The translations under genes were made by a program, and so were the position numbers. Below are positions 1 through 63,925 of a stretch of DNA of 64,000 bases, piece after piece. The notes beneath the pieces were generated by a model. That model did not search any database. It saw nothing but the letters and a program-made list of their open reading frames with translations, and was not told the DNA's origin. The stretch spans positions 310,001 through 374,000 of the IMG/VR virus record IMGVR_UViG_3300044957_000763; one strand, written 5' to 3'. Each line of letters opens with the position of its first letter. Position 1 is the first letter of the stretch.

Positions 1-48
1 ACAAAAACCAGCCTGCTAGATGCTATACTAGAAACAGAAGTATGTTGA
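1..48 (+). CDS. 3' end of upstream paralogue of the 26-aa repeat proteins (partial)
   Basis: Frame 1 reads TKTSLLDAILETEVC*, nearly identical to the C-terminus of 42..485; overlaps next ATG. Confidence 0.8.
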   Translation, partial: TKTSLLDAILETEVC

Positions 49-485
49 CAATTACAAAAGACACTACACCAGAAGAAGCATACGCACACGCACTTAACGT
101 AATCCAAGACCGCTGGCCGGAGGCCGAACCAATCATCCAACAAAACAGGGAGTATGCATACTACTACGCAAACGGCGTCATCAAAGGACGTTGGCCGGAA
201 GCCGAACCAACTATCATGCAGAATTCAAAATACGCATTGTGTTACGCAACAGACGTAATCCAAGACCGTTGGCCGGAGGCCGAAGCAACCATCCAACAGG
301 ATGCATATTATGCGCGGCACTACACTGAACATTTCTTCCCAGGAATAAAAGTTGTTACAAAACAACAAATTAACAATAATTGGTTATGGGAGAAAAATGG
401 CGCAATAGGATTTTTTGCACCAAAAGAACTCTTCAAACCAACAACCAGCATTCTAGATACTATACTAGAAACAGAAGTATGTTGA
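42..485 (+). CDS. 26-aa repeat (RWPEAEP.IQQ..YAY.YA.DVI) solenoid-like protein, 3 repeats
   Basis: Repeat visible in translation; shares N- and C-terminal caps with 479..1714. Confidence 0.85.
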   Translation: MLTITKDTTPEEAYAHALNVIQDRWPEAEPIIQQNREYAYYYANGVIKGRWPEAEPTIMQNSKYALCYATDVIQDRWPEAEATIQQDAYYARHYTEHFFPGIKVVTKQQINNNWLWEKNGAIGFFAPKELFKPTTSILDTILETEVC

Positions 486-1714
486 CAATTACAGAAAACA
501 CCACACCAAAAGAAGCATACTGCTACGCACGAGACGTCATCAAAGGACGCTGGCCAGAGGCCGAATACATCATCCAGCAGGATGTACAACACGCATACTT
601 CTACGCACTTAACGTCATCAAAGGACGCTTTCTGGAAGCCGAACCAACTATCCAGCAGAATGCACAATACGCATACGAATACGCACGAGACGTAATCAAA
701 GGCCGCTGGGAAGAAGCTGAACCAGCCATCCAGCAGTGTAACGAGTGTGCATGCGCCTACGCACACGATGTAATCCAAGCCCGCTTCTTAGCGGCCGAAC
801 CAACTATTCAACAGTCTGCATATTACGCATACGAATACGCAAAAGACGTAATCAAAGACCGCTGGCCAGAAGCAGAACCAGCCATTCTGAAAAGTGCAAA
901 ATATGCATACTTATACGCATATGAAATCCTTGAAAACCGCTGGCCGGAGGCCGAATCAATCATCCAGCAGGATGCTGAATATGCATGTTGTTACGCACGC
1001 AACCTAATCGAAGACCGATGGTTAGAAGCCGAACCAACCATCCAGCAGGATGCAAAAGAAGCATACTTATACGCATTTAACATCATCAAAAACCGTTGGC
1101 CGGAGGCCGAATCAACCATCCAGCAGGATGCAAAATACGCATGCTTATACGCAGAATACCTAATCCAAGACCGTTGGCCGGAGGCCGAACCTATCATCCA
1201 GCAGAATGCAAAATGCGCATACAAATATGCACTGAACGTAATCCAAGACCGATGGCCGGAGGCCGAACCAATCATCCAACAAAACAGGGAGTATGCATAC
1301 TACTACGCAAACGACGTCATCAAAGGACGTTGGCCGGAGGCCGAACACATCATTCAGCAGAATTCAAAATACGCATACTACTATGCACGAGACGTAATAC
1401 AAGACCGATGGCTGGAGGCCGAACCGACCATCCGAAAGAATGCATTTTACGCATACTGCTACGCACGAGACGTAATCAAAGACCGCTTCCTAGCAGCCGA
1501 ACTAACTATCCAGCAGAGCGCCGAATACACGCAACAATACACTGACTGCTTCTTCTCAGGAACAAAAGTTGTTACAAAACAACAAATTAACGATGATTGG
1601 CTATGGGAGAAAAAGGGCGCAATAGGATTTTTTGCACCAGAAGAAATGTTCAAAACAAAAACCAGCATTCTAGATGCTATACTCCAAGAAAGTCCGCAAT
1701 GGGCCAACATATAA
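479..1714 (+). CDS. 26-aa repeat solenoid-like protein, ~13 repeats
   Basis: Start moved from 380 to ATG 479 (MLTITENTTP matches MLTITKDTTP of the paralogue; ATGTTGA overlap). Confidence 0.88.
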   Translation: MLTITENTTPKEAYCYARDVIKGRWPEAEYIIQQDVQHAYFYALNVIKGRFLEAEPTIQQNAQYAYEYARDVIKGRWEEAEPAIQQCNECACAYAHDVIQARFLAAEPTIQQSAYYAYEYAKDVIKDRWPEAEPAILKSAKYAYLYAYEILENRWPEAESIIQQDAEYACCYARNLIEDRWLEAEPTIQQDAKEAYLYAFNIIKNRWPEAESTIQQDAKYACLYAEYLIQDRWPEAEPIIQQNAKCAYKYALNVIQDRWPEAEPIIQQNREYAYYYANDVIKGRWPEAEHIIQQNSKYAYYYARDVIQDRWLEAEPTIRKNAFYAYCYARDVIKDRFLAAELTIQQSAEYTQQYTDCFFSGTKVVTKQQINDDWLWEKKGAIGFFAPEEMFKTKTSILDAILQESPQWANI

Positions 1715-9133: not shown

Positions 9134-9203
9134 TTGGAATTAGTGTATGGCAACACATCCGGGGTTGAACCGGAAGATGCGGGTTCAATTCCTGCGTTCC
9201 GAT
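9134..9203 (+). tRNA. tRNA-Gln(UUG)-like, atypical anticodon loop, CCA not encoded
   Basis: Cloverleaf: acceptor TTGGAAT/GTTCCGA, D stem GTGT/ACAC, anticodon stem TCCGG/CCGGA with loop GGTTGAA, T arm GCGGG-TTCAATT-CCTGC. Confidence 0.75.
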
Positions 9204-17987: not shown

Positions 17988-19136
17988 ATGATGACAATGA
18001 CAGTACATCGTTCAGCATCCTTGTTTTATCGCGAGGGTTCAAGTGACAAAGAATACAATCTGTTCATCGAGGAATCGGCCGCGGGGCCTGGACTGTTCGA
18101 TGTACGGGCAACATGGGGTCGACGCGGAAGCGCCAACGACACTCAGCACAAAGCCCAAGGGGTTTCCATGCTCCAAGCTGAAGCGACTTTTGAGTCGTTA
18201 AAGCGCGCCAAGGAAGCCAAGGGATATCGAGAAGACCCGAGCATGGCACAAGGAAAACCACTTATTTCAGTGCCTGCATCATTTATTGTTGGCAATGCTG
18301 GCACCGCATCTATGCCCCTGGAGCGCGAGCTCACTGAACTCAAGCCCCAGTTACTGAATCCAATCACCGTCGATGAGATGGAGCGGTTCATCACCAGCGA
18401 TGCGTGGTTGGTACAGGAAAAACTTGATGGCAAGCGCATCATGGTTGAAGTCAGCTTTGGAAATGTGACTGCAAGTAATCGACGCTCTTGGAAGGTTGGT
18501 ATTCCGCAGGATGTGGCTGAAGAGCTCGCAAAGTTCGATGATTGCATTTTGGATGGCGAGCTGGTTGGTGGTGTGTATTACGTTTTCGATTGCCTGTCTC
18601 ACAACAGTGAAGACTTGCGGCCGGATTCGTACTTAAATCGCTTTAACACGCTTGTCGAGGAGGTGATTGGCGACCGTATGCTGTATCAAGTGGACATCGT
18701 TCCAACTGCTTACGGTACGAACGAGAAGCGCAAGCTGGTTCAGAGTTTAGAGCACAAAGAAGGTGTGGTGTTCAAGGAATTGAGCGCACCACACACTGTT
18801 GGGCGTCCTAACTCTGGTGGTTCGCAATTCAAGTGCAAGTTCTGGAGTTCGGCTACTTGTGTGGTGAGTGCGGTCAATAACGAAGCTGGTTCTACCAAGA
18901 GCAAGCGAAGCGTGGCTGTGGCTGTCGATTCGCCGGAAGGATTCGTTCAGGTTGGCAACGTCACGGTTCCCCCGAACTACGATATGCCGAATCTTGGAGA
19001 TTACGTAGAAATCAAGTATCTCTACTTCAATCCAGGCGGAGCGTTGTACCAACCCCAATATCTTGGCGTTCGCGATGACGTTGAGATAGATTTACTGTCA
19101 TCGCTAAAACCAAAATCGGAGGATTCAGACGACTAA
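17988..19136 (+). CDS. WGR-domain ATP-dependent DNA ligase
   Basis: SDKEY..WGRRG; motifs QEKLDGKR, ILDGEL, YYVFD, EGVVFK, KCK; OB domain VEIKY..LYQP. Confidence 0.85.
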   Translation: MMTMTVHRSASLFYREGSSDKEYNLFIEESAAGPGLFDVRATWGRRGSANDTQHKAQGVSMLQAEATFESLKRAKEAKGYREDPSMAQGKPLISVPASFIVGNAGTASMPLERELTELKPQLLNPITVDEMERFITSDAWLVQEKLDGKRIMVEVSFGNVTASNRRSWKVGIPQDVAEELAKFDDCILDGELVGGVYYVFDCLSHNSEDLRPDSYLNRFNTLVEEVIGDRMLYQVDIVPTAYGTNEKRKLVQSLEHKEGVVFKELSAPHTVGRPNSGGSQFKCKFWSSATCVVSAVNNEAGSTKSKRSVAVAVDSPEGFVQVGNVTVPPNYDMPNLGDYVEIKYLYFNPGGALYQPQYLGVRDDVEIDLLSSLKPKSEDSDD

Positions 19137-40150: not shown

Positions 40151-40195
40151 ACGAAACCGGCCCCGGAGCTACGGCTCCGGGGTATAACAAACATC

Positions 40196-40798
40196 ATGGG
40201 AACAAACTTCTATTGGAATACCGAAGAACCCAGGGTACTCGAAACTATCGAGACACTTGGTTCGTGGCGTGCTCCTTTGCGGTCTGGATACAGTGAACCA
40301 GCGAAGCCTGAAACGATAGAGGAACTGCGAGGTCTAGGTGTGCCAGAGGGCGTACTCGAAAACATGGCCAATCCGACACCTCCGTCGTTGAATGACTTGA
40401 GCCACATCGGCAAGCGGTCGGCTGCTGGGTTGTACTGTTACAGTTGCAACTCGTGGTTTCACGACCCTGCAAACTGCGATAGCCGGCCAGAACGTGAGCG
40501 AACGTCATGCCAGTATTGCGGCACGAAACATGATAACCAGATGGGTCGCTCGGCCTCGGTTGAACTGGGCTTCTCCGAGGCGGCCAAGCAAAGACCAGAC
40601 TCTGGAGTCAATGGTACATGCTCATTCAGTTGGGCTAACTGGCCAGATACGGTGTATCGCATCGCACTGACCGCACCAGCCGAGATGCCATTGGTGATTG
40701 ACGAATATGGCCGGACCATGACAGGACAAGAGTTTTTGGACATGCTTCGAGCCAACGTCGATATCACCAAAATGTCGATTGGCCAAATGTTTTCGTGA
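40196..40798 (+). CDS. conserved phage protein (MGTNFY...HIGKRS) with zinc ribbon
   Basis: Motif +38; CYSC...CQYC; IDEYGR. Confidence 0.8.
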   Translation: MGTNFYWNTEEPRVLETIETLGSWRAPLRSGYSEPAKPETIEELRGLGVPEGVLENMANPTPPSLNDLSHIGKRSAAGLYCYSCNSWFHDPANCDSRPERERTSCQYCGTKHDNQMGRSASVELGFSEAAKQRPDSGVNGTCSFSWANWPDTVYRIALTAPAEMPLVIDEYGRTMTGQEFLDMLRANVDITKMSIGQMFS

Positions 40799-58549: not shown

Positions 58550-58789
58550 ATGCCAAAGCAAGACACAAGTATCGTCAATGCCGTTGCACAATACACGCAA
58601 CGCCAGACTCGTCAGCAGGTCAAAAGGTTGCTGATTCGTGCCGATAAACTCAACGGCGACCGGCTTGCCCGCATCCCTGGTGCCGGGGATGAGTTACGCA
58701 AGCTCTTGGACAAAGTCGCAACCTTAGACCAAAAGGCTGCCCATGATTTTGCCGTGAGCATCGGGTGGGGCGACCGAATCCCCGCATAA
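58550..58789 (+). CDS. hypothetical protein
   Basis: AGGAG SD in the extended leader. Confidence 0.7.
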   Translation: MPKQDTSIVNAVAQYTQRQTRQQVKRLLIRADKLNGDRLARIPGAGDELRKLLDKVATLDQKAAHDFAVSIGWGDRIPA

Positions 58790-58854
58790 ATCGCCGGTCC
58801 CGGAACCCCGCTAGGCGGGGTTCCCTAGCAATGTCCCAAGGGACAGGAGGCACC

Positions 58855-59242: not shown

Positions 59243-59572
59243 CGCGGCCCCGGAACTCAACCGCGTCCGCCTACCTAAAACATGGCAAGCAAGGTGCAAT
59301 CATGAAGTATTGAACGGAACGAAATTTGGAACCGACAAGCCGGGGGTGGTGCCCCGGCTCCACAAGCCATGCCGGCCCCGGACATCGAAGATGCCGGCGG
59401 TGATTAACTCCCGCCACAAACTCTTTGGTCGCCGCGGCCTGGCTGGCGACCAGCTTTGCGTTTCTCTAAGGATAGGGGGTGGCATCAAGGTTTAGGTACC
59501 ATATCTGAAATAGTAACGTCCGTATACGGGATGTTATTTTTTCTCTGTGAGCCACATAGGGGGGTGGACCTA

Positions 59573-60340
59573 GAAAACCGATTTTTGATTTGAAAAGGCC
59601 ATTTTCGAAAAAATACCACACAAAAATTTAGCTTAAAGTTTTTGACCCTTGAATTCTGACCATGATATGTTTTCAATAAACCACTTTGGCACACTCTTTT
59701 TGTGTTTGCCCCTGTGACATGTGGCACACAACAGCTCGCATTTGTCTAACTCTTTGGTAATTGCATCAATGTTATATGAATCGCTCTTATTTATTTCAAA
59801 CAATTTGTCTCTTGTGTGGTGAAAATCAAATTCACCAAAATCGTCAAAGCGATTAGACTCTCGACCACAAGATTCGCACCGCCACCCCTTATATGACATA
59901 CAAAAATAACGATACTTGTATCTATTGAATGAATTACGACATGTAATGCACAACTGTTGTTTGCGCTTGCCTAAAACTGTATTACAGCATTGACAAGTAT
60001 AATAGTCAGGTTTGGGCACACGAGTTCCTCTAGCAATGTATGGTTGTCTAGTAGTATGCGCAACTGGCAATCGTTCTGCGTTTTCACCACAATACGGTTT
60101 ACACTTAAAACAGTTCAGGCGTTTATACCCACCAACTCTAACACCAACAGAAACAACAGGTCTTGCATTAAATAACTCGCCACATGTCTTACAAATCTTT
60201 GTCATGTTTGTTTTATACAGTCATCTAGTTCGTATTTTTTCAAATATGGTACCCCCGGTGGGTCGGAAAAACCGATTTTGGTTTGAAAAGGGCCATTTTC
60301 GAAAAAATACCGCACAAAATTTTTGCCAAAAGTTTTCGAC
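59573..60340. repeat. ~75-bp imperfect A/T-tract direct repeats (59573-59646, 60266-60340)
   Basis: AAAACCGATTTT..TTTGAAAAGG(G)CCATTTTCGAAAAAATACC.CACAAAA in both copies. Confidence 0.85.
59633..60205 (-). CDS. zinc-finger HNH endonuclease
   Basis: YKG.RCESCG, FDFHH, ELDKCELLCATCHR..H; several N-terminal CxxC. Confidence 0.85.
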   Translation of the reverse strand: MTKICKTCGELFNARPVVSVGVRVGGYKRLNCFKCKPYCGENAERLPVAHTTRQPYIARGTRVPKPDYYTCQCCNTVLGKRKQQLCITCRNSFNRYKYRYFCMSYKGWRCESCGRESNRFDDFGEFDFHHTRDKLFEINKSDSYNIDAITKELDKCELLCATCHRGKHKKSVPKWFIENISWSEFKGQKL

Positions 60341-60376
60341 TTGCAAAATCCGGGCGCATGTGGTAAACTGGTTGTA

Positions 60377-60502: not shown

Positions 60503-61045
60503 ATGACAATTAGAAAAATCACACCTGTTAAGCCACGCTCTGAGTTCAACTGTACACTGTACTTAGCAGATTTGGGTATCGCTATCAAAATGCAAGGCCA
60601 CACAAGCTATCAAAGCCATGGTTGGCGAGACCACATTCTTATGTTGACATTTACCCCATCATACCCGCAACAAGCGGTGTATCATGGTTCTCAAAATGTC
60701 GTTGTGTTTCATGAGGCTGGCCGCACACATCATTTAACTAACTTGCGTATTCACAAGTTACACAATGGTTCGATGTATTTGGAGTGCAATGGTGTCAACC
60801 TGGTGCAATTCGAAGAACCAGCTTGCGAGTGGTTCTCATTCGACTTGGCACGATTTGATGAAGTCCTGCAGTTGCCACGGCCTACCATGGATGGTTTTTG
60901 GTGGCGGTATTCTGAAAGTCACCATGAATCTAGCTTATGTGTAGAGTATAGATACACAACACGCCAGCCCAGCGTAAATTCTCTTGGCACAAAATACATG
61001 AAACCCAACAAGTTGGACATAATGCTCGAGGAGTTAGTACAATGA
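60503..61045 (+). CDS. hypothetical protein (C-terminal LDxxL)
   Basis: ORF in a translationally coupled run. Confidence 0.75.
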   Translation: MTIRKITPVKPRSEFNCTLYLADLGIAIKMQGHTSYQSHGWRDHILMLTFTPSYPQQAVYHGSQNVVVFHEAGRTHHLTNLRIHKLHNGSMYLECNGVNLVQFEEPACEWFSFDLARFDEVLQLPRPTMDGFWWRYSESHHESSLCVEYRYTTRQPSVNSLGTKYMKPNKLDIMLEELVQ

Positions 61046-61725
61046 AAAAGCCAGTTGCAATCAAACGCGTCGACCAGGGTTCACGGGGAATTTCTGACAG
61101 TATCAGCACAAAGACATTGCTCAAAACCCATAGAGTGCGCAATTTATTCAGGAATCATTACATTGGCCATCTGTGGAATTCCTCAGAGAGCCACGAAGAC
61201 GACACCTGCCACATCCAGATTACATGGGCTGAAAAAGACTCTGATGGTCTCAGTTTACTAATTGACCCTGGTTTTGAGTATGCGATTGGCGAGTGTCTTA
61301 AAGACAAACACATGAAGCACTCTGGTGCAGTGAGCGAAGCTCAATCTCAATGGTTCCGCGCATTCGGCCGCAGAAACGACGGCATGCTGGCTATCAACCC
61401 ACTTGACAGGGTTTTGGAATACGAAAAGTACTTCGGCAATAACATCGCGCAAGACCGCATTGCCTATGCAGAGGTCGTTCCACCTGGCAACGTGCTTTGC
61501 TTTAGCTGGCTAAAAGCCAACTACATGCACTTAGAATTCAATGAAGACCGCACAGTAGACGTGTGGATGAAATACCATACTCAAATTAACCCTAAAATGT
61601 ATGCTTCGCCAGACGATATTGATTATGATGAGGATGAAGAAGAATTTATTGATTCAATGCTTGTAAATATTCGTGGACTTCAAGGGGCGTCCATGTTGGA
61701 TGAACTACTCAATGGGCTCATATAG
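61042..61725 (+). CDS. hypothetical protein (C-terminal LDxxL)
   Basis: ATGA overlap; GAGGAG SD. Confidence 0.75.
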   Translation: MKKPVAIKRVDQGSRGISDSISTKTLLKTHRVRNLFRNHYIGHLWNSSESHEDDTCHIQITWAEKDSDGLSLLIDPGFEYAIGECLKDKHMKHSGAVSEAQSQWFRAFGRRNDGMLAINPLDRVLEYEKYFGNNIAQDRIAYAEVVPPGNVLCFSWLKANYMHLEFNEDRTVDVWMKYHTQINPKMYASPDDIDYDEDEEEFIDSMLVNIRGLQGASMLDELLNGLI

Positions 61726-62281
61726 AACACCAATTAAGCACGACTGGCGATTAAGGAATATTGTTTATGTGTTTCTTGGTGATGCCAACCTGGTCATGCG
61801 TATCGAACTAAGTGTGGTTCAAAAGCCATCTTGGTATGACAAAAGGGTTTGGCTTGCGTGTCACATGCACGAAATTCAGTATGCACCGTACTCAGGGCAT
61901 TTGAACATGATACACACGCCAGCAACGCGCCGAACTCACCCGTTGATTTCATTCAAATTAAACAACAACGTGTGCGCGAACGATAAAGTCCGCTGGGTTA
62001 TTCTTGAGATTAACGCCATTGACAAATACGAACACCCATCCATACCAGAAGATTTCCAATATCTAAGCCCTCTCGATGTCATACGCATATCAAGATGTCC
62101 GGTTCCACAGCGACTTGACATAGATTGGAGTGCCGGGCATAAAACCTCCACCTTAGAAATGTCCGCAGTAAGTCAGGAGACTGGAACACCAACCGATGCC
62201 GGCGCAAGAAGGCGCATGGAATCAGACCCAAGCTACCTTGATGACATATTCCAAACATGGGGTTTGGCAAATATCACATAG
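61712..62281 (+). CDS. hypothetical protein
   Basis: Start moved to ATG 61712. Confidence 0.65.
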   Translation: MGSYRTPIKHDWRLRNIVYVFLGDANLVMRIELSVVQKPSWYDKRVWLACHMHEIQYAPYSGHLNMIHTPATRRTHPLISFKLNNNVCANDKVRWVILEINAIDKYEHPSIPEDFQYLSPLDVIRISRCPVPQRLDIDWSAGHKTSTLEMSAVSQETGTPTDAGARRRMESDPSYLDDIFQTWGLANIT

Positions 62282-62299
62282 TTATGGTATACTAATACC

Positions 62300-62824
62300 A
62301 TGAGCAAACGAACACCATTGAAGAAAGGGGAGACCGGTTACGCCTATGTGTTTTTGTCTGACCCAGGCGTTGTGTTAAAGATTCGAGGTAGTGTTGAGCA
62401 TTATTCATGGAATGGCAAGCGTTTGCATTTGGATATGAAGTCCAAGAGTATTTCGATTGCAGAGTACACCGGGAACCGTGACATTGTGTATTTCCCTGGC
62501 GTTGACCGTTGCCGTCCACTAGAGAGTTTTGATTGTTATTTCAGCAATAGTGGTTCTGAGCGTATCACGATGGAATTTAATGGCGTTGACACTGCTAATC
62601 GGCCGCAGGTTCCAGATAATTTTGACCCCAACGCATCTACGTTGAATCTTTTACGTCATTTACGTGTACCACCTCCGGTGAGTATACGGTTGAATTGGGT
62701 TGCATCAGACTATCGCAGTAAGCAGTCAAAATATTCATGCAAGCTGGAGTGCGTAGAGGGCGACCGTAAGACTTCTTCTCGTCGTCAGAGTGAAGTGGAT
62801 AGAGTTTTAGATTCACTGCTATGA
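62300..62824 (+). CDS. hypothetical protein
   Basis: TGGTATACT 6 nt before ATG. Confidence 0.75.
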   Translation: MSKRTPLKKGETGYAYVFLSDPGVVLKIRGSVEHYSWNGKRLHLDMKSKSISIAEYTGNRDIVYFPGVDRCRPLESFDCYFSNSGSERITMEFNGVDTANRPQVPDNFDPNASTLNLLRHLRVPPPVSIRLNWVASDYRSKQSKYSCKLECVEGDRKTSSRRQSEVDRVLDSLL

Positions 62825-63531
62825 AACCAAGAGTTTACAAAGACCTAAGGTCAAAGCACCGCTATCAAAGCAGTTCTTTCTGGGTCACTCTTGTAAAAAA
62901 GGGCTACCACCCTCGGACTGGCGCACATAAGCCTACAGTGAGCGTTGCAGATTACAACGATTATCTTCTCGAGGCGCAATTGAATGCTGGTTTCTTTGAA
63001 TTTGATGGTTGGAGCTATCCAGTTATTAGTTGGTCGCTTGTCGGCCGCGTGCATGACGACAGATATGATTACACCAGGTGTTTTTATGAACTTGTGCTGG
63101 GTACAACCGCATTGCCAGCTCGCAAGCCCGAGCGGATTATTTTGGACAACGAGCGTGGCTACGGTGTGCAAGACGCCAAGACAAGACACTGTTATCGGAT
63201 TAGCAACTATCGTTGCAAGCTGGTTAAGAAAAGCGTGAACGTTGACCAGTCGCACCATGTCATAGTTGTTTCAATGAAATACTATCACTATGACGCATTA
63301 AAGTATTGGCTCAAAACCAACGATGTTGTTTCTTTCAACCATATGCTATACTTGGTTCTAGGCTGTGAAGATATTCCTCGCCACGGTGCGTTGAAGAAAG
63401 ACGGCACACCTTATTGCAGCAACAATGTTTATGTTCAATTGAAACTCAAGGCCCCAGGCCGCAAAATCCAATACGACCATGAACGGCCCAGAAGCATTTT
63501 AGACGAGATACTTGAGAATGTACATTTATGA
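62821..63531 (+). CDS. hypothetical protein (C-terminal SILDEILE)
   Basis: ATGA overlap. Confidence 0.75.
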   Translation: MKPRVYKDLRSKHRYQSSSFWVTLVKKGYHPRTGAHKPTVSVADYNDYLLEAQLNAGFFEFDGWSYPVISWSLVGRVHDDRYDYTRCFYELVLGTTALPARKPERIILDNERGYGVQDAKTRHCYRISNYRCKLVKKSVNVDQSHHVIVVSMKYYHYDALKYWLKTNDVVSFNHMLYLVLGCEDIPRHGALKKDGTPYCSNNVYVQLKLKAPGRKIQYDHERPRSILDEILENVHL

Positions 63532-63925
63532 CGACCGTTGGATATTGAAGAAACCTCTAACGATTGTCGAGTTCAATTTAGACGAGGTTACTATTTTCGA
63601 ATGCAGGGCTCTGAGCGGAGAGTTTTACAACAATCGTCTTCGCAAGTTAATTGTAGCCGACCTCATCAATATTCATCGCGCAGAAGCCTACGATGGTCAC
63701 AGCACGCCAATTACTGAATCCTTTCGCATTCAGCATGGAGAACCAATGCCCAACACACGTTATATTGGAATTGCACAAACAGCGTGTGTAGTAGACCGTT
63801 ATTTCCGCATTCTATCGCAGCGCGTTACGTCCCCAGTAGGTTATTTCATGGGCATATACGAGCTCGCTGGCTTACCTGGAGAGGGGCAAGGTATGCTGGA
63901 CGATGTGCTAGAGGAGTTTGTATGA
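63518..63925 (+). CDS. hypothetical protein (C-terminal MLDDVLEE)
   Basis: Overlaps the upstream stop. Confidence 0.7.
   Translation: MYIYDDRWILKKPLTIVEFNLDEVTIFECRALSGEFYNNRLRKLIVADLINIHRAEAYDGHSTPITESFRIQHGEPMPNTRYIGIAQTACVVDRYFRILSQRVTSPVGYFMGIYELAGLPGEGQGMLDDVLEEFV

What the first reader, a model, noticed from the sequence alone, without database searches (positions are those of the whole stretch)
60503..63925. Shared C-terminal LDxxL helix on unrelated proteins at both ends of the window
Seen: six consecutive, otherwise dissimilar proteins end in NKLDIMLEELVQ, SMLDELLNGLI, SYLDDIFQTW.., EVDRVLDSLL, SILDEILENVHL and GMLDDVLEEFV. The three repeat proteins at 1-1714 end in SLLDAILETEVC, SILDTILETEVC and SILDAILQES... 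Array proteins do not obviously show this. Inference: a common acidic amphipathic docking tag, e.g. for capsid packaging/ejection, binding a shared hub, or proteolysis. An overlapping GAGGAG SD can explain 'LEE' in two cases but not the LDxxL core.
Basis: partly seen in the sequence, partly recalled or inferred. Interest (0 to 1): 0.7.

Follow-up and report, generated by a model that had tools for sequence, protein, structure and literature searches.

The report
Shared C-terminal docking tag in a megaphage
About thirty mostly unrelated small proteins of a 479-kb phage end in the same short helix (S-Φ-L-D-x-Φ-Φ-E), a conserved address label that probably docks them all onto one partner, most likely the phage's own DNA sliding clamp, though that partner is not proven.

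Summary
**Observation: confirmed and much larger than reported.** The window is part of a complete 478,840-bp metagenomic phage. All nine C-termini read as described.

- **Enrichment:** the motif [ST]-x-[LIVM]-D-x-Φ-Φ occurs 16 times in C-terminal tails against 18 times in all protein interiors (about 18-fold, p~3e-15). About 28-33 genes carry it. An unsupervised scan finds it as the top C-terminal pattern.
- **Artefacts excluded:** paralogy gives only a few related pairs, and overlap with the next gene's ribosome-binding site does not explain it.
- **Conservation:** the pattern is kept in orthologues at 45-66% identity. It is enriched again in a distant relative (DnaE 69% identical), where five consecutive cluster genes keep the tag although their bodies are mostly unrecognisable.
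- **Specificity:** three other jumbo phages have 0-1 such tails.
- **Structure:** AlphaFold2 shows ORF5 as folded body, loose linker, then an isolated Ser-capped helix ILDEILE.

**Receptor: unresolved.**
- Best guess (~0.4): a clamp-binding tail. It resembles T4's KASLDFLF, the phage encodes its own β-clamp, and its DnaE polymerase ends in SILDSFE.
- Rivals: capsid targeting like T4 internal proteins, a degron for a lineage-specific AAA+/M41 protease, or another hub.
- Complex prediction gave no answer.

I rate it a new variant of a known kind.

The parts
60503..61045 (+). O1, 180 aa, ORFan. Distant paralogue of O3/O4. Tag NKLDIMLE at nt 61007-61030, with 4 residues after it.
   Evidence: orthologue tails conserved in L029/L031
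61042..61725 (+). O2, 227 aa, ORFan. Tag SMLDELLN at nt 61690-61713.
61712..62281 (+). O3, 189 aa from the ATG at 61712 (the longest frame starts at 61673). Paralogue of O4. Tag SYLDDIFQ at nt 62231-62254.
   Evidence: a remote homologue in G006 keeps ...SALDQFLAEC
62300..62824 (+). O4, 174 aa. Tag SEVDRVLD at about nt 62789-62812, then SLL.
62821..63531 (+). O5, 236 aa. AF2 model: folded alpha/beta body (residues 13-210), unstructured linker (211-225), isolated helix 226-232 = ILDEILE with Ser225 as N-cap. Tag SILDEILE at nt 63493-63516.
   Evidence: (homologues at 45-66% identity keep S-x-[LI]-D-x-[ILM]-[LF]; Asp228 invariant); no fold match
63512..63925 (+). O6, 137 aa, ORFan. Tag GMLDDVLE at nt 63890-63913.
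1..48 (+). 3' end of repeat protein R1 (genome 309293-310048, 251 aa). Tag SLLDAILE at nt 10-33.
42..485 (+). Repeat protein R2, 147 aa (helical ~33-aa WPEAEP repeats). Tag SILDTILE at nt 447-470.
479..1714 (+). Repeat protein R3. The likely start is the ATG at 479 (MLTITEN..., like R2); the longest frame starts at 380. Tag SILDAILQ at nt 1664-1687.
60245..60375 (+). Conserved ~110-nt element upstream of the cluster: an A/T-rich tract followed by a sigma70-like promoter (TTGCAA-17 nt-TAAACT). It is present upstream of the orthologous clusters in L029 and L031. A second copy at 59563-59646 lies on the other side of the HNH gene.
   Evidence: alignment A7

Best explanation
**What it is (shown).** The tag is a lineage-specific short linear motif. 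It is a two-turn amphipathic acidic helix, (K/P)-x-S-Φ-L-D-x-Φ-Φ-(E/D), N-capped by Ser. It hangs on a flexible linker 0-10 residues from the C-end of about 30 proteins, roughly 6% of the proteome. Most carriers are fast-evolving small ORFans in co-directional clusters. The tag is preserved while the bodies diverge or are replaced.

**How it works (inferred).** The tag is an address label that docks all these proteins into the same groove of one receptor.

**Most likely receptor (inferred, ~0.4).** I favour the phage-encoded DnaN-type beta sliding clamp. The tagged proteins would then ride on clamps loaded on replicating phage DNA as a greatly enlarged 'tool-belt'. T4 does this on a small scale: DNA polymerase gp43, gp33 and gp55 share interchangeable hydrophobic-acidic C-terminal tails that bind gp45.
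For: **The tag is real and selected.**
- Enriched at C-termini genome-wide.
- The pattern is conserved in orthologues. Asp is kept in every orthologue tail (one tail in a shifted register), and the hydrophobic positions swap only among I/L/V/M/F.
- Enriched again in the distant relative G006: 15 C-terminal against 16 internal regex hits. Five consecutive genes of the counterpart cluster are tagged.
- Not caused by ribosome-binding-site overlap.

**Architecture of a tethered motif.** The AF2 model of O5 shows body, linker, then a short helix. Pro, Lys and Arg are mildly enriched upstream of the tag.

**Specific to the clamp.**
1. The phage encodes a beta-clamp (L025:1498-2649) and a DnaX-type clamp loader. 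The clamp's C-terminal FPV(R) pocket strand is invariant in the lineage (A3).
2. The DnaE polymerase (1108 aa) ends ...KSKPSILDSFE, matching the tag at K, S, Φ, L and D.
3. In about 70 phage-type DnaE homologues this tail position holds clamp-binding-like peptides: SLDLFPDDLL, LLSDDLFD, VFSDEFFGD. Only this lineage has S-[IV]-L-D. ORFan tags were seen only in genomes of this lineage and not in three jumbo phages with other DnaE tails.
4. In G006 the ORFan consensus (S-L-L-D-S-Φ-L, e.g. EPSILDSCLE) is closer still to DnaE's SILDSF.
5. T4 gp43 ends EKASLDFLFG. Its LDFLF motif binds gp45 as an amphipathic alpha-helix (PMC6212786). The gp43, gp33 and gp55 tails are interchangeable (PMC2988020). 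Bacterial beta-binders use QL(S/D)LF (PMC9690074).
6. The clamp gene is flanked by two sigma-factor genes. One has a conserved internal P-S-P-L-D-M-I-V segment; this is weak evidence.
Against: - With the candidate anchors left out of model building, the DnaE tail scores only 6.6 and 4.2 bits (P~0.014 and 0.025 per tail). It lacks the second hydrophobic residue after Asp. My earlier score of 13 bits was partly circular.
- The complex prediction of clamp plus the O5 tail returned 'no answer' (score 0.00), so it gives no support.
- The ligase-like protein in the window has no tag, and no flap endonuclease was found. DnaE is therefore the only tagged protein with a replication role.
- Thirty clamp partners, nearly all ORFans, is far beyond any known phage clamp interactome.
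- A tag-like segment in the protein encoded downstream of the clamp gene is not conserved in orthologues.
- Beta-clamp ligands usually bind in an extended form, and the motif has no Gln and a different spacing from QL(S/D)LF.
Confidence: 0.4

Rival explanations
1. Capsid-targeting tag. The tail loads the ORFans into the procapsid, by docking on a scaffold, portal or shell component, so that they are ejected with the DNA. This would work like the T4 internal proteins, or like the C-terminal cargo-loading peptides of encapsulins.
For: [quoted passage not shown] Here too the carriers are clustered, fast-evolving ORFans sharing only a terminal peptide.
- A charged 383-aa protein encoded just upstream of the portal gene (genome 455868-457019; portal and major head protein identified) ends ...ELDMMIEELLSD. 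This resembles O1's KLDIMLEEL. It scores 8.9 and 6.6 bits with ORFan-only models (P~0.005 and 0.009), better than DnaE.
- That tail is conserved in distant jumbo phages.
- Encapsulin cargo peptides show that C-terminal tags can address HK97-fold shells (PMC11866011, PMC8346489).
- Giant phages are known to package many ejection proteins (PMC7411985).
Against: - The head-module tail is equally present in tag-negative G001. It does not shift with the ORFan consensus between G000 and G006, and it matches only the half of the motif after Asp.
- The T4 CTS is N-terminal and is removed at [LI]-x-E. No T4-type (PF03420) or HK97-type (PF04586) prohead protease was detected.
- Tagged genes lie in the long small-gene block at 260-400 kb, not in structural modules.
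- A sigma70-like promoter with an UP-like tract precedes the cluster. This is a weak hint of early expression.
- The tagged bodies are not basic.
- The AF2 model of the head-module protein is poor (pLDDT 48), so its role is unknown.
Confidence: 0.2
2. Degron or adaptor tag. The tail marks the proteins for timed destruction by the phage's own soluble AAA+/M41 (FtsH-like) protease.
For: - Genome 280733-282772 encodes a 679-aa protein with AAA+, ClpB-D2-small-like and Peptidase_M41 domains. Walker A, Walker B and the HEAGH motif are intact, and no membrane anchor is evident.
- It lies immediately upstream of tagged genes in both G000 and G006.
- It is present in the two tag-positive genomes and absent from the three tag-negative ones.
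- C-terminal tails are the commonest degrons of bacterial AAA+ proteases (PMC9382460).
Against: - 111 other G000 genes share the same presence/absence pattern.
- The motif sits at a variable distance (0 to over 10 residues) from the free C-terminus, so it is not recognised through the terminal carboxylate.
- It is acidic and helical, which suits groove docking better than threading.
- A degron on the replicative polymerase would be odd if the DnaE tail is a true member.
Confidence: 0.15
3. Another hub. The tag binds some other conserved or lineage-specific partner, such as host RNA polymerase, the host clamp, or an unannotated phage protein. It could also mediate assembly of tagged proteins with each other.
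For: - Both functional anchors are statistically weak.
- 112 genes are shared only with the tag-positive relative, and most are unannotated.
- No tagged ORFan has a recognisable domain or fold.
Against: There is no positive evidence for any specific alternative. A short single helix is a poor self-assembly module.
Confidence: 0.25

Closest known systems
T4 sliding-clamp-binding tails (gp43 EKASLDFLFG; gp33 and gp55 C-termini; ligase loop EGLDFLFD)
   Same: - Unrelated proteins of one phage share a short hydrophobic-acidic peptide, mostly at the extreme C-terminus on a variable linker.
- The core sequences are close: S-L-D-F-L-F against S-Φ-L-D-x-Φ-Φ.
- The T4 motif binds as an amphipathic alpha-helix, and the tails are interchangeable (PMC6212786, PMC2988020).
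   Different: - T4 has about 4-5 carriers, all replication or late-transcription proteins. Here there are about 30, nearly all ORFans.
- The clamp here is a DnaN-type beta-clamp, not gp45.
- Binding is not demonstrated.
Bacterial beta-clamp-binding motif QL(S/D)LF
   Same: A terminal short linear motif used by many partners of one ring. Related phage DnaE proteins end in the classical ...SLDLF....
   Different: There is no Gln, the hydrophobic spacing differs (i, i+3, i+4), and a helix is predicted rather than an extended peptide.
T4 capsid targeting sequence (CTS) of internal proteins
   Same: A conserved terminal peptide is the only thing shared by a cluster of diverse, fast-evolving accessory proteins (PMC3012670).
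   Different: The CTS is N-terminal, is cleaved at [LI]-x-E by gp21, and its carriers are basic. Here the tag is C-terminal, no such protease was detected, and the carriers are not basic.
Encapsulin cargo-loading peptides
   Same: A C-terminal peptide on a linker addresses unrelated cargo to the inside of an HK97-fold shell (PMC11866011, PMC8346489).
   Different: From my own knowledge, the sequence type differs: encapsulin peptides are Gly/Ser/Leu-rich and not acidic. Nothing here shows shell binding.
ssrA-type and FtsH C-terminal degrons
   Same: A C-terminal tag with a cognate AAA+ protease encoded nearby.
   Different: This tag is not anchored at the terminal carboxylate, and it is acidic and helical.

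Membership tests
Sliding-clamp-binding motif (T4 LDFLF type / bacterial QL[SD]LF type) | Short hydrophobic(-acidic) peptide at or near a terminus, on a flexible linker, shared by unrelated proteins | tested here: met
   Consensus and position; AF2 body-linker-helix model; mostly unrelated bodies
Sliding-clamp-binding motif (T4 LDFLF type / bacterial QL[SD]LF type) | A cognate clamp is encoded or available | tested here: met
   DnaN-type clamp at L025:1498-2649 (PF02767 44.9 bits, PF00712 23 bits); clamp loader
Sliding-clamp-binding motif (T4 LDFLF type / bacterial QL[SD]LF type) | The replicative polymerase of the same genome carries the same motif at its C-terminus | tested here: inconclusive
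   DnaE ends KSKPSILDSFE. This shares K-x-S-Φ-L-D but lacks the second hydrophobic residue. ORFan-only models give 6.6 and 4.2 bits, P~0.014 and 0.025. The tail type co-occurs with tag-positive genomes.
Sliding-clamp-binding motif (T4 LDFLF type / bacterial QL[SD]LF type) | Match to the published consensus | tested here: not met
   QL(S/D)LF: no Gln, and different spacing. The T4 S-L-D-F-L-F motif is similar but not identical (PMC6212786, PMC9690074).
Sliding-clamp-binding motif (T4 LDFLF type / bacterial QL[SD]LF type) | Peptide binds the hydrophobic pocket of the clamp | tested here: inconclusive
   Complex prediction returned 'no answer' (score 0.00), which by the tool's own terms is neither for nor against
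T4-type capsid targeting sequence | N-terminal leader removed by a gp21-type prohead protease at [LI]-x-E | tested here: not met
   The tag is C-terminal. PF03420 and PF04586 proteases were not detected. Φ-Φ-E is present in only about half of the tags.
T4-type capsid targeting sequence | Carried by diverse, clustered, fast-evolving accessory proteins | tested here: met
T4-type capsid targeting sequence | Carriers are found inside virions | not testable with these tools
   The phage is known only from metagenomes, so no proteomics exist
C-terminal degron of an AAA+ protease | A cognate ATP-dependent protease is present | tested here: met
   AAA+/M41 protein with intact motifs. It co-occurs with the tag in G000 and G006 only.
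C-terminal degron of an AAA+ protease | Recognition element fixed at the extreme C-terminus | tested here: not met
   0 to over 10 variable residues follow the motif

The most novel reading that the evidence does not exclude
One lineage of megaphages has evolved a proteome-wide addressing system. A portable C-terminal helix is acquired by about 30 rapidly turning-over accessory proteins per genome and delivers them all to a single hub. If the hub is the phage's own beta-clamp, this would be by far the largest viral clamp interactome known. It would concentrate accessory, possibly anti-defence, proteins on replicating phage DNA. If the hub is the procapsid, it would be a C-terminal, encapsulin-like cargo-loading system in a tailed phage.
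Probability: 0.55. Interest if true: 0.8.

Novelty: new variant of a known kind. Interest (0 to 1): 0.62.

Why it matters
- **It organises the ORFans.** Most genes of huge phages have no known function. A conserved address label on about 6% of the proteome groups some thirty unknowns into one functional set, and one receptor identification would explain them all.
- **It is directly testable without culturing the phage.** Synthetic tag peptides or tag-GFP fusions can be tested against a few recombinant candidates: the clamp, the head-module proteins and the AAA+/M41 protease.
- **It shows tag and body evolving separately.** The tag is kept across relatives whose bodies are unrecognisable. This is how short linear motifs spread in eukaryotic proteomes and is rarely documented in viruses.
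- **It could be useful.** A portable 8-10-residue tag with a defined phage receptor could tether proteins to DNA or load them into capsids.

Tried and rejected
- **Family searches.** Pfam and PHROGs on 26 tagged proteins found nothing except DnaE and weak repeat matches.
- **Single-protein locus searches.** Searches in IMG/VR for O2, O5, the clamp and DnaE found no close relatives, and megablast against GenBank phages found none. Relatives came only from the large protein database and from a DnaE alignment.
- **Complex prediction.** Clamp plus O5 tail gave no answer.
- **Covariation test.** In three other jumbo phages there is no expansion of tails resembling their own DnaE tail. The test could therefore not show covariation, but it showed the expansion is lineage-specific.
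- **Internal tag-like segment in the 362-aa protein downstream of the clamp gene.** It is not conserved, so I dropped it.
- **ESM Atlas look-alikes.** Nothing above chance.
- **Fold searches.** Searches of the O5 model in PDB and AFDB gave TM <=0.29. The model of the head-module protein was too poor to search with.
- **Expression class.** It could not be inferred. Sigma70-like sites are rare and scattered. The AT-rich element occurs only at the HNH flanks, and the stem-loop element is confined to the array.
- **Other clamp clients.** The ligase-like protein is untagged, and no 5'-3' exonuclease or NAD ligase was found.
- **A correction to my own numbers.** My first scoring model included DnaE and the head-module tails among its training sites, which inflated their scores. 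I corrected this.
- **Lost job.** The search of protein representatives was lost remotely and then unavailable.
- **Caveat on counts.** Gene calls are from my own simple ORF caller, so counts are approximate.


Full report
**Setting.** The window is bases 310001-374000 of a single-contig, 478,840-bp virus record with direct terminal repeats, judged complete. GC is 44.5%. It is a metagenomic 'megaphage' and has no near relative in GenBank phages. It encodes the following:
- a DnaE-type polymerase, DnaB, RecJ, ribonucleotide reductase and a DnaX-type clamp loader;
- a DnaN-type beta-clamp flanked by two sigma-factor genes;
- an intein-containing terminase, a portal and a major head protein.

**The observation.** A seventh tagged gene follows the six just beyond the window. 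I called genes on the whole genome with a simple codon-usage ORF caller (493 genes, 87.5% coverage).
- The pattern [ST]x[LIVM]Dx[LIVMF][LIVMF] occurs 16 times within about 20 residues of a C-terminus and 18 times in 130,617 internal positions. That is an 18-fold excess (p=2.8e-15), and there is none at N-termini.
- A position-specific model gives the consensus (K/P)-x-S-Φ-L-D-x-[ILM]-[LIF]-[ED] and about 28-33 carriers.
- An unsupervised reduced-alphabet scan recovers the pattern as the top C-terminal signal.
- Three other jumbo phages of 300-379 kb, found through a DnaE alignment and fetched whole, have 1, 1 and 0 such tails with identical internal hit rates.

**Artefacts excluded.**
- Paralogy. 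With tails removed, only the repeat proteins and O3/O4 match at 1e-3. A more sensitive search adds O1 to the O3/O4 family.
- Overlap with the next gene's ribosome-binding site. It makes no difference to the acidic position, and SD-like tetramers are no commoner in overlapping cases.
- Non-coding ORFs. Almost none of them score.

**Conservation.**
- O5 has homologues at 45-66% identity. All end S-x-[LI]-D-x-[ILM]-[LF]-x-x-V, and the Asp is invariant.
- The cluster is syntenic on metagenomic contigs, where 5-7 genes keep the tag and flanking genes lack it.
- Strict identity in the tag (0.55) is no higher than in the body (0.50), but the substitutions are conservative and the Asp is always kept.
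- The strongest evidence comes from G006, a 1.36-Mb NCBI contig whose first 400 kb are phage-like (GC 52-56%, DnaE 69% and clamp 62% identical). There the regex gives 15 C-terminal against 16 internal hits, mostly on ORFans with no G000 homologue. The local consensus is S-[LV]-L-D-S-[VLM]-L.
- In G006's counterpart of the six-gene cluster, five consecutive genes end in the tag, yet only two bodies are still recognisable. The tag outlives its carriers.

**Anatomy.** AlphaFold2 on O5 with its homologues (pLDDT 76.5) gives a folded alpha/beta body (residues 13-210), an unstructured linker (211-225) and an isolated helix at 226-232, ILDEILE, with Ser225 placed as the N-cap. The hydrophobic positions (-2, -1, +2, +3, +6) lie on one helical face. 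Zero to more than ten variable residues follow the motif. Tagged genes concentrate at 260-320 and 360-380 kb inside a long co-directional block of small genes, and there are none in the large-gene structural regions. No tagged ORFan has a recognisable family or fold.

**Mechanism.** A conserved, portable, linker-tethered helix on unrelated proteins is best read as a docking label for one receptor. That step is inference, but strong inference. Which receptor is not settled.

*Clamp.*
- The motif resembles T4's gp45-binding tail. gp43 ends EKASLDFLFG, and LDFLF binds as an amphipathic helix (PMC6212786). T4 is also the precedent for interchangeable hydrophobic-acidic tails on unrelated proteins (PMC2988020).
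- This phage has its own beta-clamp and loader.
- Its DnaE ends ...KSKPSILDSFE. About 70 phage-type DnaE homologues carry clamp-binding-like tails at that same position, such as SLDLFPDDLL, LLSDDLFD and VFSDEFFGD, and only this lineage has S-[IV]-L-D.
- The tag-positive genomes have that tail type, and the tag-negative ones do not.
- Against: with ORFan-only models the DnaE tail scores just 6.6 and 4.2 bits (P~0.014 and 0.025). Complex prediction gave no answer. The ligase-like protein is untagged.

*Capsid targeting.*
- T-even internal proteins are diverse defence proteins that share only a capsid targeting sequence (PMC3012670).
- A charged 383-aa protein encoded just upstream of the portal gene ends ...ELDMMIEELL. 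It scores 8.9 and 6.6 bits (P~0.005 and 0.009).
- Against: that tail is just as present in tag-negative G001 and does not follow the ORFan consensus between genomes. No T4- or HK97-type prohead protease was found. The carriers are not basic.

*Degron.*
- A soluble AAA+/M41 protease with intact motifs lies beside tagged genes and occurs only in the tag-positive genomes.
- Against: 111 other genes share that distribution, and the motif is not fixed at the free C-terminus.

I put the clamp at about 0.4, capsid targeting at 0.2, degron at 0.15 and another hub at 0.25.

**Novelty.** Shared terminal docking peptides in phages are known from the T4 clamp tails and the T4 CTS. I found no description of this motif or of anything on this scale in the library searched. 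I classify it as a new variant of a known kind.

Noticed in passing
window 59633-60205 (- strand); repeats at 59563-59646 and 60257-60340: An HNH endonuclease gene (PHROG 2255, E 1e-16) is flanked by two 81%-identical copies of an 84-nt element. These are the only two copies in the genome. Relatives have a 168-171-aa gene at this position instead. It looks like a homing-endonuclease insertion that duplicated the cluster's promoter region.
   Followed up: partly
window ~10000-60000 (genome 320-370 kb), e.g. 58789-58853: There are 33 copies of an intergenic unit: CCGGTCCCGGAAC, a GC-rich stem-loop (GGAACCCCG...CGGGGTTCC), then GGGACAGGAG before each small gene of the 'array'. All copies are on the + strand and confined to this region. 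It may be an RNA-processing, terminator or translation-initiation cassette.
   Followed up: partly
genome 280733-282772 (L015:733-2772), outside the window: A soluble FtsH-like protein of 679 aa with AAA+, ClpB-D2-small-like lid and M41 peptidase (HEAGH) domains and no evident membrane anchor. It is unusual for a phage. It is present in G000 and G006 and absent from three other jumbo phages.
   Followed up: partly
genome 430295-435560 (L025/L026/L022): The gene order is clamp loader, small gene, sigma factor (regions 2 and 4), beta-clamp, 362-aa unknown, second sigma-region-4 protein. It is conserved in relatives down to 51% clamp identity. The close linkage of clamp and sigma genes recalls clamp-activated late transcription in T4 and phage Mu (PMC7892883, PMC12867686).
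   Followed up: partly
G006 = contig C5 of an NCBI MAG labelled Armatimonadetes (L120, L124-L143): At least the first 400 kb of this 1.36-Mb contig are megaphage-like, syntenic with G000 and with homologues throughout. The contig may be a mis-binned or chimeric assembly, an integrated or very large element, or a hint at the host.
   Followed up: partly
genome 437130-440249 (terminase); SNF2 helicase genes in L031-L033: The terminase large subunit carries a LAGLIDADG-type insertion, and the SNF2 helicase next to the cluster has one in some relatives. Inteins or homing elements seem common in this lineage.
   Followed up: no
window 17988-19136: An ATP-dependent ligase-like protein of 382 aa with an N-terminal WGR-like segment and an acidic C-terminus (...SEDSDD). 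It carries no tag.
   Followed up: partly
genome 412423-414021 (DnaB-like helicase) and 410016-411641 (AAA protein): Both end in acidic-aromatic tails (...EDDLIFPFGDDDI and ...IVIMDEDDDL). These resemble the tails of SSB and of the T7 helicase that recruit partners, and may be a second, separate docking code in the replisome.
   Followed up: no
window 9134-9203: tRNA-Gln (anticodon TTG), the only tRNA in the window.
   Followed up: no
window 40151-40798 (genome 350151-350798): A 215-aa protein has ...EFLDMLRANV... 18 residues from its end. It is the only tag-like hit in the array region and is probably not a true member.
   Followed up: no
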